64,000 bases of DNA, from positions 110,980,001 through 111,044,000 of the forward strand of contig NC_042997.1 in NCBI RefSeq assembly GCF_006345805.1, read 5' to 3'. Source of the stretch: Octopus sinensis (taxonomy: Eukaryota). Positions 53,101-56,100 of this stretch are shown piece after piece. Both the position numbers and the translations under genes were made by a program. Under the pieces are notes generated by a model that saw only the letters and a program-made list of their open reading frames with translations, ran no database searches and was not told the origin of the DNA. Every line of letters starts with the position of its first letter. Position 1 is the first letter of the stretch.

Positions 53101-56100
53101 GTTCTATATTAATGTGAAACTGATTGGAGGCGAGAGAGAGAAACATTGGTACTTTAAAGCCAAAACTGGTAATTCCAGAACATTTTATACACAAAAAGGA
53201 AAAAAAAAAGGGGACAGCAAGTGTTTGTTGCCGCTGCTGCTGCTGCTGCTAATGACAACAATGGTGGCATCTGAATTTGCAGTGAAGGGCTTCCTCTCAT
53301 CAAAGCAGGCTGTGATATGAAGGATTGGAAAGCATATGACAGCCACTTTGATGAAAGGAGATCCCAGCCATCGCTGTATGGTCTCATGTTTGAGCTCATC
53401 AAAGCTGGCTGTGATATGGTTTAGTGAGAACACATCACCACCACTTTGGTGACTTAAAGCAGAGAGCAGAGCCCCCGACAACACAAGAACGGAGGGGGCT
53501 ATCTGGCTGAGTTATCTCCAACAAGTCATTGTCTGAAAAGGGAATCCTACAGCTACAGAAGGCACCGCTTTTGGGGACGATCAATGATTTAAGTGGTCCT
53601 GGGATATATCAAGAGAACATAGCACAATTGAAAAAAATACGTCAAACAATAACTAAAACAATTTTTTTTTTTTTTTTTATAATTTCAGTTCCCCAACATT
53701 TAATTTTTTATTTGAAGAATATTTCTGAAAATACATTGGTCTATGAAAACTAAATGACTTCTAAATGATAAAAATGAGGAATATTAAATTTCTAAGACAA
53801 AGTAAACAAGTAAATTGGAGGTGAAATAACCCAAGTGTAGCTCATCAAAGCTAGCTGTGATATGTCAGAAAGTCAGCATATCCCAGCTCTTTAATGAGTT
53901 ACAATAGGGTCGGAACATCAAAACAAATTCAACATTTATTGACATAAACAACATCTTAATCCAGCAAGAACATTAAATTTCCCTCGTCAACTAAAATGGT
54001 GAGAAGTGTGCCAAAATAAACCAAGTCCCAGCTCATCAAAGCTAGCTGTGATATGTCATAATAGCAGCATATCCCAGTTATTTGATGAGTTACAACTAAG
54101 CCACTAGAATTCAGGGTGCCAGATACAAAAGCATGAAGAAAAACATGGAAAGGGACATAAAGTTGGGAAAAAGGAGAGAGAAAATATCCAGGAGGGTTAA
54201 CCAGGTTGCTGAGAACAACCAAGTTGAAGCTCATCAAAGCTAGCTGTGATACGTCATTATAACCGCATATCCCAGTTATTTGATGAGATACAACATGGTC
54301 AATAGATACACGCAGAGAACTATGTCTAATTCAGAAATGCCAATCGGAGGAGGGAAACAAAATAAATTAATCTAACCATTTATTCTTGCCAAACACTTCA
54401 CACAAAATTAGGGGAAAAAAAAAGTCATGTAAATTAAATACAAAAAAAACCTCACACAACTAACAGGTTTATAAAAAACAAAAAGGAACATCTCAAGCGA
54501 CATGTGGATTTGTGATGCTTTCAACAGTGCCCTAGCTCATCAAAGCTAGCTGTGATACGTCATTTTGTTAGCATATCCCAGCTCTTTGATGAGATACAAC
54601 ACAGTCACAACACTAAGGATATTGGTTAAAAAAAAAAGCTGAAGAAAGCTATTGCCACACAAAAAACAGGAAAAAAAAAAAAAGGTTTAAAGCTAGCGGA
54701 GCAGGGAAGCAACCTACAGCCAGCTCATCAAAGCTGGCTGTGAGACGTTCAAATATCTATATATCACAGTCCTTTGATGAGCTGTAACAAGGTTAGGAGA
54801 GAATAGGCAATGTTAAAAAGGTTTTAAAAAATGGCTGTTGTCAATCCCAAGGCGTTGGAGCACCAAGTATATTACTGATCCAAGCAGGCTGTGATATGAA
54901 AATCCAATTTAGCAGCACATTCACAACCACTTGGTCAGTAATAGACATGGCAGACAAAACAATAAAAAAAAATCTTCGTTTCTATCCTGAAAACTCAAAA
55001 TCTGCAAATATCCAAGTGGGGGTAAGGGGCGCACCAAACTAGCAGTGATGACTGGCAGGAGACAAGGCTCATCAAAGCTGGCTGTGATAGGCCCTATAGA
55101 TTTACTATGACATCCAGCATTGATGCCTTTGTAACCCGTTTCTACATCAAGCTCTGTTGCACTGAAAGGAATAATGGAGAGGGGCAGGGGAATATAACTG
55201 AAGTAGTTGTTCAACTAAAATTCAATTTATTTTTTGGTTACATAATTAAATATAATTAGACAAACTAGTTTTGCTTTACCTGCAGTTTCAATTCATATTT
55301 CATCAGCAGCAAGAATGTAAAGTGATCCGCTCGAAAGACAGGGTAGTAAGAAGTTTATAAAATAACATCTCACTACCCGTGTCTTTCAAGCCAAACACAA
55401 TTGTTATAGTGGAAAAAATAAAAAGGGGACGAGGCTGGAAACTGAAAAAAGGGCAAAACTACAACAGGGGGGAGAGTAGTAAGTTAGTGCATGTTTCGTA
55501 AAGTAATAGGTAGTTGAAAGTGTCCACTTACGGCAGCAGCTTCTGTGCGAAATTCATCTGGACTTGTTGGACAAGCAAGGTCCAACAATACTTGAACCAC
55601 CTGGTCTTCAACATCGACTGAAATAAAACATTAACATGCTAAAGGACACATGATCACCCAAAATATTTAGAAAGGATTCAACAATTTAAAATATTTTTAA
55701 TGAGTTTCACAAAATCTATTTACATCCTACTGCTGACTGTGGAGGAATGAATAATGCCAGCCATTCTCTGTAAAGAAGGAAGCAAATACTTGAATGCAAT
55801 CCATACCAATAGCTATGATGGAAGCTTCGACATTGGATTGAAATCTTTTGAGTTAAGTTTGACCTAACAATAATATATAAAAGGCATTTCATCCATCAGC
55901 TTTCCAATTTAGTGAATTCCATATCAATGTCCATTTATTTTTTTAATGCTGGCATGTGGTCAGTTTGGGAGAATCTGATGATCCCAAGGACTGCACATCA
56001 TGCTCCATTGTCTGCCGACATGGTTTCTACAGCTGGGTGCCTCTCTAATGCCAAACATTTTTTCAGAGTGTACTGGGTGCTTCTCTTGTGCCACCAACAC

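What the first reader, a model, noticed from the sequence alone, without database searches (positions are those of the whole stretch)
53287..55391. Intronic mir-71 plus nine-copy mir-2 polycistron inside PPP4R1
Seen: ten fold-back hairpins within 2.1 kb of one intron (51287-55531), all on the host strand, with mir-71 first and then nine mir-2 paralogs in five mature sequence variants. Established: a mir-71/mir-2 cluster hosted in an intron of a phosphatase-4-related gene is the ancestral protostome arrangement. Inference: nine copies is a large dosage and may reflect a lineage expansion. An ORF track misses the locus entirely. It may already be catalogued in curated miRNA databases.
Basis: partly seen in the sequence, partly recalled or inferred. 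Interest (0 to 1): 0.72.

Follow-up and report, generated by a model that had tools for sequence, protein, structure and literature searches.

The report
Intronic mir-71 plus nine mir-2 cluster
One intron of a phosphatase-4 regulatory subunit (PPP4R1-like) gene carries the well-known invertebrate mir-71/mir-2 microRNA cluster, ordinary in kind but with nine mir-2 copies, five of them from a local tandem expansion.

Summary
On the minus strand of 53291-55394, Rfam finds mir-71 (66.5 bits) followed by eight mir-2 hairpins above the curated cut-off. A ninth (55063-55130) scores 40.4 bits, below the 45.5 cut-off, but carries the canonical miR-2a mature sequence and has counterparts at the same position in two unrelated contigs.

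The hairpins lie in intron 51287-55531 of a minus-strand gene collinear with PPP4R1 (7072-59438).

Of 58 environmental contigs fetched with the miR-71 sequence, 35 carry PPP4R1-like exons on the mir-71 strand. Where both flanks are present, the cluster sits in this same intron. The host relationship is therefore old, consistent with C. elegans ppfr-1.

Those contigs hold at most five mir-2 copies. The literature I could read reports at most six per cluster. Copies C-G form one clade (76-89% identical) whose spacers have diverged to noise. This points to an old local expansion with selection on each hairpin.

Copy C has a seed change (AUCACAG to CUCACAG).

Expression, processing and co-transcription with the host are untested. 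The source organism was not identified; the mature sequences match published mollusc miR-2 forms.

This is a new member of a known kind, of modest interest.

The parts
7072..59438 (-). Minimum span of the host gene, a PPP4R1-like HEAT-repeat regulatory subunit of protein phosphatase 4
   Evidence: The only PDB matches are weak ones to the PP2A A subunit, the paralogous HEAT scaffold.
55532..55588 (-). 3' part of the exon upstream of the host intron (..LLDLACPTSPDEFRTEAAA)
   Evidence: tblastn. The same ..D[DE][FY]RTEA[AV]A exon end lies just upstream of mir-71 in L060, L021, L008 and others.
51287..55531 (-). Host intron (4245 nt) holding the cluster. The hairpins occupy its 5' half and the last 2 kb hold no miRNA hit.
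   Evidence: GTAAGT donor at 55531 and ..TTTCTTTCAACAG acceptor ending at 51287. Rfam E-value scan of 50500-56500.
51179..51286 (-). Exon downstream of the host intron (LMCKMAPLLGREMTERLFLARFTQMCSDPLFHVRR)
   Evidence: tblastn. The homologous exon follows the last mir-2 in 16 metagenome loci in the tblastn (anchors a downstream exon in 15, not an identical set).
55325..55394 (-). mir-71 hairpin. The predicted miR-71-5p, UGAAAGACACGGGUAGUGAGAUG, lies at 55366-55388 and has C instead of the usual U at position 10, a bulged base.
   Evidence: RF00832 66.5 bits. MFE -45.4, z -9.9. All 58 metagenome loci have T at this position.
55063..55130 (-). mir-2 copy A. Mature UAUCACAGCCAGCUUUGAUGAGC at 55067-55089.
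   Evidence: RF00047 40.4 bits, below the 45.5 cut-off. Hairpin MFE -29.7. It groups with the first-position copies L006_1 and L037_1, which share its unusual 5p arm and are likewise missing from the gathering-threshold list.
54870..54941 (-). mir-2 copy B. Mature UAUCACAGCCUGCUUGGAUCAGU at 54874-54896 (miR-2d type).
   Evidence: RF00047 46.4 bits. The mature sequence is identical to lgi-, cgi- and bgl-miR-2d. It groups with L060_1, L008_1 and L037_2.
54719..54784 (-). mir-2 copy C. Predicted mature UCUCACAGCCAGCUUUGAUGAGC at 54723-54745, with a seed change A to C at position 2.
   Evidence: RF00047 48.2 bits on the minus strand and 44.6 on the plus strand. The 5p arm still complements the ancestral seed. 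It is the basal member of the C-G clade.
54531..54596 (-). mir-2 copy D. Mature UAUCACAGCUAGCUUUGAUGAGC at 54535-54557.
   Evidence: RF00047 50.6 bits. The mature sequence is that of cgi-miR-2b-1, without its 3'-terminal U.
54225..54290 (-). mir-2 copy E, same mature sequence as D, at 54229-54251
   Evidence: RF00047 49.4 bits. 89% identical to D and F.
54027..54092 (-). mir-2 copy F, same mature sequence as D, at 54031-54053
   Evidence: RF00047 49.0 bits.
53836..53901 (-). mir-2 copy G, same mature sequence as D, at 53840-53862
   Evidence: RF00047 45.7 bits, just above the cut-off. MFE -33.0, z -6.3.
53390..53456 (-). mir-2 copy H. Mature UAUCACAGCCAGCUUUGAUGAGC at 53394-53416.
   Evidence: RF00047 58.3 bits.
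53291..53358 (-). mir-2 copy I. Mature UAUCACAGCCUGCUUUGAUGAGA at 53295-53317.
   Evidence: RF00047 55.9 bits. MFE -38.9, z -7.9.

Best explanation
This is the conserved protostome mir-71/mir-2 microRNA gene cluster, sitting in its ancestral host intron of the PPP4R1 (C. elegans ppfr-1) orthologue.

Proposed mechanism:
- The ten hairpins are most likely transcribed as part of the host pre-mRNA. The first hairpin begins only 137 nt after the 5' splice site.
- Drosha/Pasha cuts them out of the intron and Dicer processes them.
- The products are miR-71-5p and, from the 3p arms, miR-2 species. Eight of the nine share the seed AUCACAG, so they repress largely the same targets.

Proposed history: an older set of about five paralogues (A; B; the ancestor of C-G; H; I) grew to nine through tandem duplication of one member. 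The extra copies were then kept under selection. They mainly raise the dosage of one isoform, UAUCACAGCUAGCUUUGAUGAGC, which is encoded four times.

Shown: the family identity, hairpin structure, arrangement, host-intron conservation and duplication history.
Inferred: transcription, processing, arm choice and the effect on dosage.
For: Family and structure:
- Rfam hits on one strand, in order, all inside one intron.
- Stable hairpins.
- The RNAalifold consensus hairpin of the nine copies has 24 pairs, 9 of them with compensatory double changes. For example, the C-to-U change in the 3p arm of D-G is matched by G-to-A in the 5p arm (GC:5, AU:4). Covariation extends into the basal stem.
- A CNNC motif lies 14-20 nt downstream of the mature end in 7 of 9 copies, against a 21% background in the intron (binomial P about 5e-4; the window of offsets was chosen after seeing the data).

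Host gene:
- The host is collinear with PPP4R1.
- 35 of 58 metagenome mir-71 contigs carry PPP4R1-like exons on the same strand, and the cluster lies between the same two exons.
- The mir-71/mir-2 linkage is ancestral in protostomes (PMC3384581; PMC4244043).

Mature sequences: those of B and D-G equal published oyster, limpet and snail miR-2d and cgi-miR-2b-1.

Expansion:
- C-G are 76-89% identical to each other and 52-65% to A, B, H and I.
- Their spacers show almost no residual similarity (z -0.6 to 3.7), while the hairpins give z 11-22.
- The comparators hold 0-5 mir-2 per locus, and 1-5 in the 15 complete introns.
Against: - No small-RNA or RNA-seq data could be consulted, so none of the ten hairpins is shown to be processed.
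- Copy A is below the Rfam cut-off, and copy G is only 0.2 bits above it.
- Copy C has lost the family seed.
[quoted passage not shown] Host co-transcription is therefore not a safe default.
- The similarity among C-G hairpins could partly reflect gene conversion rather than selection on each copy.
- The taxonomic identity of the window and of the comparator contigs is unknown. The comparison with other molluscs is indirect.
- Oyster has at least five mature forms, and contig L060 is cut off after five copies. High copy numbers may therefore be common in this group.
Confidence: 0.88

Rival explanations
1. The cluster is real, but one or more hairpins are decaying duplicates that are no longer processed or loaded. 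The candidates are C (seed mutated), A (weak model score) and possibly G or F. The functional copy number would then be below nine.
For: - A scores 40.4 bits, below the 45.5 cut-off, and G scores 45.7.
- C has CUCACAG instead of AUCACAG, with a new mismatch opposite the unchanged 5p arm.
- F lacks a CNNC at +14..20.
- mir-2 evolves by birth and death (PMC3384581).
Against: - A has counterparts at the same first position in L006 and L037 that share its peculiar 5p arm, so it is an old, conserved paralogue type.
- All copies keep stable hairpins.
- The spacers have decayed while the hairpins have not.
Confidence: 0.25
2. The cluster is an independent transcription unit that merely sits inside the intron. 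It would have its own promoter, or would start upstream of the neighbouring exon, and would not be a by-product of host pre-mRNA.
For: In C. elegans, sequences upstream of intronic mir-71 and mir-2 drive expression patterns that differ from each other and from ppfr-1 (PMC2835999).
Against: - Only 137 nt separate the donor site from the mir-71 hairpin.
- The corresponding distance (end of the upstream exon to the start of the miR-71 mature sequence) is 81-618 nt in six of the seven related loci where that exon was found (144 nt in the window by the same measure); the seventh, L009, gives about 1.8 kb from a weaker anchor. This leaves little room for an intronic promoter upstream of mir-71.
- The same-strand orientation is conserved in all 35 loci that have host exons.
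Confidence: 0.3
3. Hairpin C, or the locus more widely, is also read from the plus strand. The plus-strand 3p arm of C carries an intact miR-2 seed (UAUCACAGUCCUUUGAUGAGCUG).
For: The Rfam plus-strand score for C is 44.6 bits, nearly equal to the 48.2 on the minus strand. The sequence was read directly.
Against: - Every hairpin, including C, scores higher on the minus strand.
- Plus-strand similarity is expected for any near-perfect hairpin.
- No evidence of antisense transcription is available.
Confidence: 0.06
4. The hairpins are chance or transposon-derived inverted repeats, not miRNA genes.
For: The window is rich in a roughly 160-nt interspersed repeat, with 20 copies.
Against: - None of those repeat copies overlaps the cluster.
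- The 22-23-nt arms match deeply conserved mature miRNAs exactly.
- The same arrangement recurs in the same intron in dozens of unrelated contigs.
Confidence: 0.01

Closest known systems
Protostome mir-71/mir-2 cluster (Marco, Hooks & Griffiths-Jones 2012, PMC3384581; de Souza Gomes et al. 2013, J Mol Evol, seen only as a citation)
   Same: mir-71 comes first, followed by tandem mir-2 copies within less than 10 kb on one strand. The mature product comes from the 3p arm with seed AUCACAG. Copy number changes by tandem birth and death.
   Different: There are nine mir-2 copies in one cluster. Most insects have five, D. melanogaster has eight spread over several loci, and C. elegans has one. One copy has a changed seed.
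C. elegans ppfr-1 hosting mir-71 and mir-2 (PMC2835999)
   Same: The host gene family is the same (PP4 regulatory subunit 1), the miRNAs are on the host strand, and both families are present.
   Different: In the worm the two miRNAs are single copies in different introns and have their own promoters. Here all ten hairpins share one intron, and the first lies 137 nt from the donor site.
Mollusc miR-2 family: cgi-miR-2a/2b/2d, lgi-miR-2d, bgl-miR-2a/2b/2d (PMC4941716, PMC7328434)
   Same: The mature sequences of A/H, B and D-G match published oyster, limpet and snail forms (cgi-miR-2b-1 as listed carries one further 3' U).
   Different: Those papers list 4-5 members. Variants C and I, and the C10 form of miR-71, were not among them. 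C and the C10 miR-71 form gave no hit in a full-text search, and I was not searched.
Spider Parasteatoda tepidariorum mir-71/mir-2 clusters (PMC4987109)
   Same: There is a lineage-specific tandem gain of mir-2 next to mir-71, with six copies in one cluster.
   Different: There the whole cluster is also duplicated, giving two mir-71 copies. Here a single mir-71 is in the window, and growth is by local duplication of one paralogue.

Membership tests
mir-2 (Rfam RF00047) | Covariance-model score at or above the gathering cut-off of 45.5 bits | tested here: met
   Eight copies score 45.7-58.3 bits. Copy A scores 40.4 bits, E 2.4e-5, and does not meet the cut-off.
mir-2 (Rfam RF00047) | Conserved 3p-arm mature sequence beginning UAUCACAG (seed AUCACAG) | tested here: met
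   Met in 8 of 9 copies. Copy C reads UCUCACAG.
mir-2 (Rfam RF00047) | Hairpin precursor with covariation that supports the stem | tested here: met
   MFE -24 to -39 kcal/mol. 9 of 24 consensus pairs show compensatory changes.
mir-2 (Rfam RF00047) | Located downstream of mir-71 in one cluster (ancestral linkage) | tested here: met
   Start-to-start spacing between successive mir-2 copies is 99-446 nt, and mir-71 lies 262 nt from copy A, all on the same strand.
mir-71 (Rfam RF00832) | Model score at or above 50 bits, and a 5p mature sequence UGAAAGAC... | tested here: met
   66.5 bits over the full model length. Position 10 is C rather than U, at the bulged base of the consensus structure.
Bona fide miRNA gene (MirGeneDB-type criteria) | Reads from both arms with 2-nt 3' overhangs and homogeneous 5' ends | not testable with these tools
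Intronic polycistronic pri-miRNA | All hairpins on the host strand within one intron | tested here: met
   Intron 51287-55531 is on the minus strand and all hairpins are on the minus strand.
Intronic polycistronic pri-miRNA | A single primary transcript shared with the host gene | not testable with these tools
   This is inferred only from the 137-nt distance between the donor site and mir-71. C. elegans shows that independent promoters are possible.
PPP4R1 / ppfr-1 host gene | Full-length collinear similarity to PPP4R1 | tested here: met
   16 collinear tblastn matches to aa 61-942. No reciprocal-best-hit test was possible, because the protein databases returned only unnamed Logan fragments.
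PPP4R1 / ppfr-1 host gene | Cluster in the intron between the ..RTEA(A/V)A exon and the LM.KMAPL.G exon, as in other protostomes | tested here: met
   Both flanking exons were found around the cluster in L010, L018, L021, L053 and L059, and by the longer probe in L011/L058; in L012, L013/L052, L029, L041 and L047 only the downstream exon was found.

The most novel reading that the evidence does not exclude
The five-copy C-G block is a lineage-specific burst that makes this the largest single mir-71/mir-2 cluster among those I could compare. Its basal member C is a processed paralogue with a new seed (CUCACAG), and hence a new target set. That would be a caught-in-the-act case of neofunctionalisation inside an otherwise redundant polycistron.
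Probability: 0.15. Interest if true: 0.4.

Novelty: new member of a known kind. Interest (0 to 1): 0.25.

Why it matters
The finding correctly annotates ten non-coding genes that a protein-based annotation would miss. It adds direct sequence evidence that the cluster's residence in one particular PPP4R1 intron is shared across many protostome lineages. The nine-copy state, with a dated-looking internal expansion and one seed variant, is a small but clean example of how miRNA families grow by tandem duplication. It does not open a new question.

Tried and rejected
1. Naming the host through databases did not work.
   - The large protein search returned only three unnamed Logan fragments.
   - PDB gave only weak PP2A-A matches.
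   - I therefore used human PPP4R1 from memory as a probe.

2. Identifying the organism did not work.
   - Logan sample accessions carry no names.
   - An exact look-up of a window ORF found nothing.
   - GTDB contig scans for the C10 miR-71 and for the D-G mature sequence found nothing.
   - No paper text held the C10 miR-71 or the copy-C sequence.

3. Fetching the cluster from the related species behind L001 did not work. L001 is 87% identical over 56539-57143. A search with spurious ORFs translated across the hairpins gave no hit at E<=0.001.

4. Literature counts for molluscs were not found.
   - MirGeneDB 3.0 and the genome-duplication preprint say nothing usable about Mir-2 numbers.
   - Other searches found only lists of mature sequences.

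5. My first crude mir-2 detector missed copy C and undercounted, so I replaced it.

6. I considered tRNA-derived repeats as a source of the hairpins and rejected the idea. ARAGORN finds no tRNA, and the interspersed repeat does not overlap the cluster.

Full report
**Observation.**
- A gathering-threshold Rfam scan of the whole 64-kb window returns nine hits and nothing else. All are on the minus strand between 53291 and 55394: one mir-71 (66.5 bits) and eight mir-2 (45.7-58.3 bits).
- A permissive scan of 50500-56500 adds a ninth mir-2 at 55063-55130. It scores 40.4 bits against a cut-off of 45.5, with E 2.4e-5. The same scan shows that every hairpin with hits on both strands scores higher on the minus strand than on the plus strand; hairpin B has no plus-strand hit.
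- The core of the mature sequence is over-represented: 14 matches against 3.4 expected, and no shuffle reaches 14.
- All ten stretches fold as single hairpins.

**Host gene.**
- The flanking minus-strand ORF fragments look like HEAT-repeat exons.
- The large protein database returned only three unnamed fragments from sequencing-run assemblies. The PDB gave only weak matches to the PP2A A subunit.
It gives 16 collinear minus-strand matches from 59438 down to 7072, covering residues 61-942.
- The cluster lies in the intron between the exons that match residues 177-196 and 196-232.

**Is the arrangement old?**
- A scan of public metagenome contigs for the miR-71 mature sequence returned 58 loci.
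- 35 of them carry PPP4R1-like exons on the same strand as mir-71. An exon ending ..D(D/E)(F/Y)RTEA(A/V)A lies just upstream of mir-71, and an exon beginning LM.(K/R)(M/L)APL.G follows the last mir-2.
- This is direct evidence that the cluster sits in this same intron in many protostome lineages.
- It agrees with the report that C. elegans mir-71 and mir-2 both lie in introns of ppfr-1 (PMC2835999).
- It also agrees with the ancestral mir-71/mir-2 linkage (PMC3384581; PMC4244043).

**Copy number.**
- A uniform detector (seed plus hairpin test) recovers all nine copies in the window. In the 58 loci it finds 0-5 mir-2 downstream of mir-71, and 1-5 in the 15 loci where the downstream exon shows the intron is complete. 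An Rfam check on 20 loci is consistent with this.
- The papers I could read give five copies for most insects, one for C. elegans and eight over several loci in D. melanogaster. They give up to six in one spider cluster, four precursors in Biomphalaria and five mature forms in oyster.
- Nine copies in one cluster is therefore at the top of what I could compare.
- The comparator contigs are of unknown taxonomy. The most oyster-like one, L060, shares cgi-miR-2a-2 and miR-2d forms and is cut off after five copies.

**History of the copies.**
- In a neighbour-joining tree of the hairpins, copies C-G form one clade. They are 76-89% identical to each other and 52-65% identical to A, B, H and I.
- They share a 90-nt repeat unit at 188-306-nt spacing.
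- Copy A groups with the first-position copies of L006 and L037. Copy B groups with the miR-2d-type copies of L060, L008 and L037. A and B are therefore old paralogue types.
- This also rescues copy A. Its counterparts are likewise absent from the gathering-threshold list yet share its unusual 5p arm.
- The spacers between C-G copies retain almost no similarity (z -0.6 to 3.7), while the hairpins give z 11-22. The duplications are thus not very recent, and the hairpins have been preserved, by selection or partly by gene conversion.
- Across all nine copies, 9 of 24 consensus base pairs show compensatory double changes, including in the basal stem.
- Seven of nine copies have a CNNC motif 14-20 nt downstream of the mature end, against a 21% background. 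I chose that window of offsets after seeing the data.

**Peculiarities.**
- Copy C has UCUCACAG in place of UAUCACAG, while its 5p arm still complements the old seed. This is a single recent-looking substitution that would change the target set if the hairpin is processed.
- Its plus strand keeps an intact seed and scores 44.6 bits. I regard this as a side effect of hairpin symmetry.
- miR-71-5p has C at position 10, a bulged base. All 58 environmental loci have T there, and no paper text held the C form.

**Mechanism.**
- What is shown is identity, structure, arrangement, conservation of the host intron and the duplication history.
- What is inferred is that the hairpins are cut from the host intron by the Drosha/Pasha complex and yield miR-71-5p and miR-2-3p species with a shared seed. 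The extra copies would then mainly add dosage of one isoform.
- Host-driven transcription is suggested by the 137 nt between the donor site and mir-71, and by similarly short distances in most related loci where the upstream exon was found.
- C. elegans, however, shows independent intronic promoters for these same miRNAs.

**Verdict.**
- The locus is a new member of a well-known kind, and it may already be catalogued if the species is in a curated miRNA database.
- The expansion claim is supported internally and by indirect comparators, but not yet by the orthologous intron of identified relatives.

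Noticed in passing
window 8809-50736 (for example 45130-45300, 10428-10596, 15789-15941, 30396-30551, 44005-44161): A roughly 160-170-nt interspersed repeat occurs 20 times at 68-85% identity, in both orientations, all inside introns of the host gene. Its start also occurs in the related-species contig L001 (positions 1-65). ARAGORN finds no tRNA in the window, so a tRNA-derived origin is unconfirmed.
   Followed up: partly
window 55366-55388 (minus strand): The predicted miR-71-5p has C at position 10 (UGAAAGACACGGG...), a bulged base of the hairpin. 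All 58 metagenome loci found with a Y at that position have T, and no paper text searched contained the C form.
   Followed up: partly
L001 205-793 versus window 56539-57143: A Logan contig from run SRR11869394 is 87% identical across an exon and its intron flanks of the host gene, so a fairly close relative has been sequenced. Three transcript-like contigs (L002-L004, ERR runs) encode a spliced N-terminal fragment that shares the ..SPEEFRTEAAALM.. junction.
   Followed up: partly
window 53232-53252 and 53661-53679: Inside the cluster region there is a (GCT)n microsatellite just 3' (in the direction of transcription) of copy I and a 19-nt poly-T run in the long spacer between H and G. The H-G spacer (379 nt) and the D-E spacer (240 nt) are longer than the others (31-132 nt).
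   Followed up: no
L006 7908 and L037 2645 (first mir-2 after mir-71), window 55063-55130: The first-position mir-2 paralogue type has a 5p arm CAUCAA(G/U)GCUGGA.GU.AUAG and a mature sequence preceded by CC. All three examples seen scored below the Rfam gathering cut-off, so Rfam-based counts may undercount this conserved paralogue.
   Followed up: partly
L060 and L037 (oriented so that mir-71 is on the plus strand): The uniform detector reports one seed-plus-hairpin candidate upstream of mir-71 in each of these two loci. I did not inspect them, and they may be chance hits.
   Followed up: no
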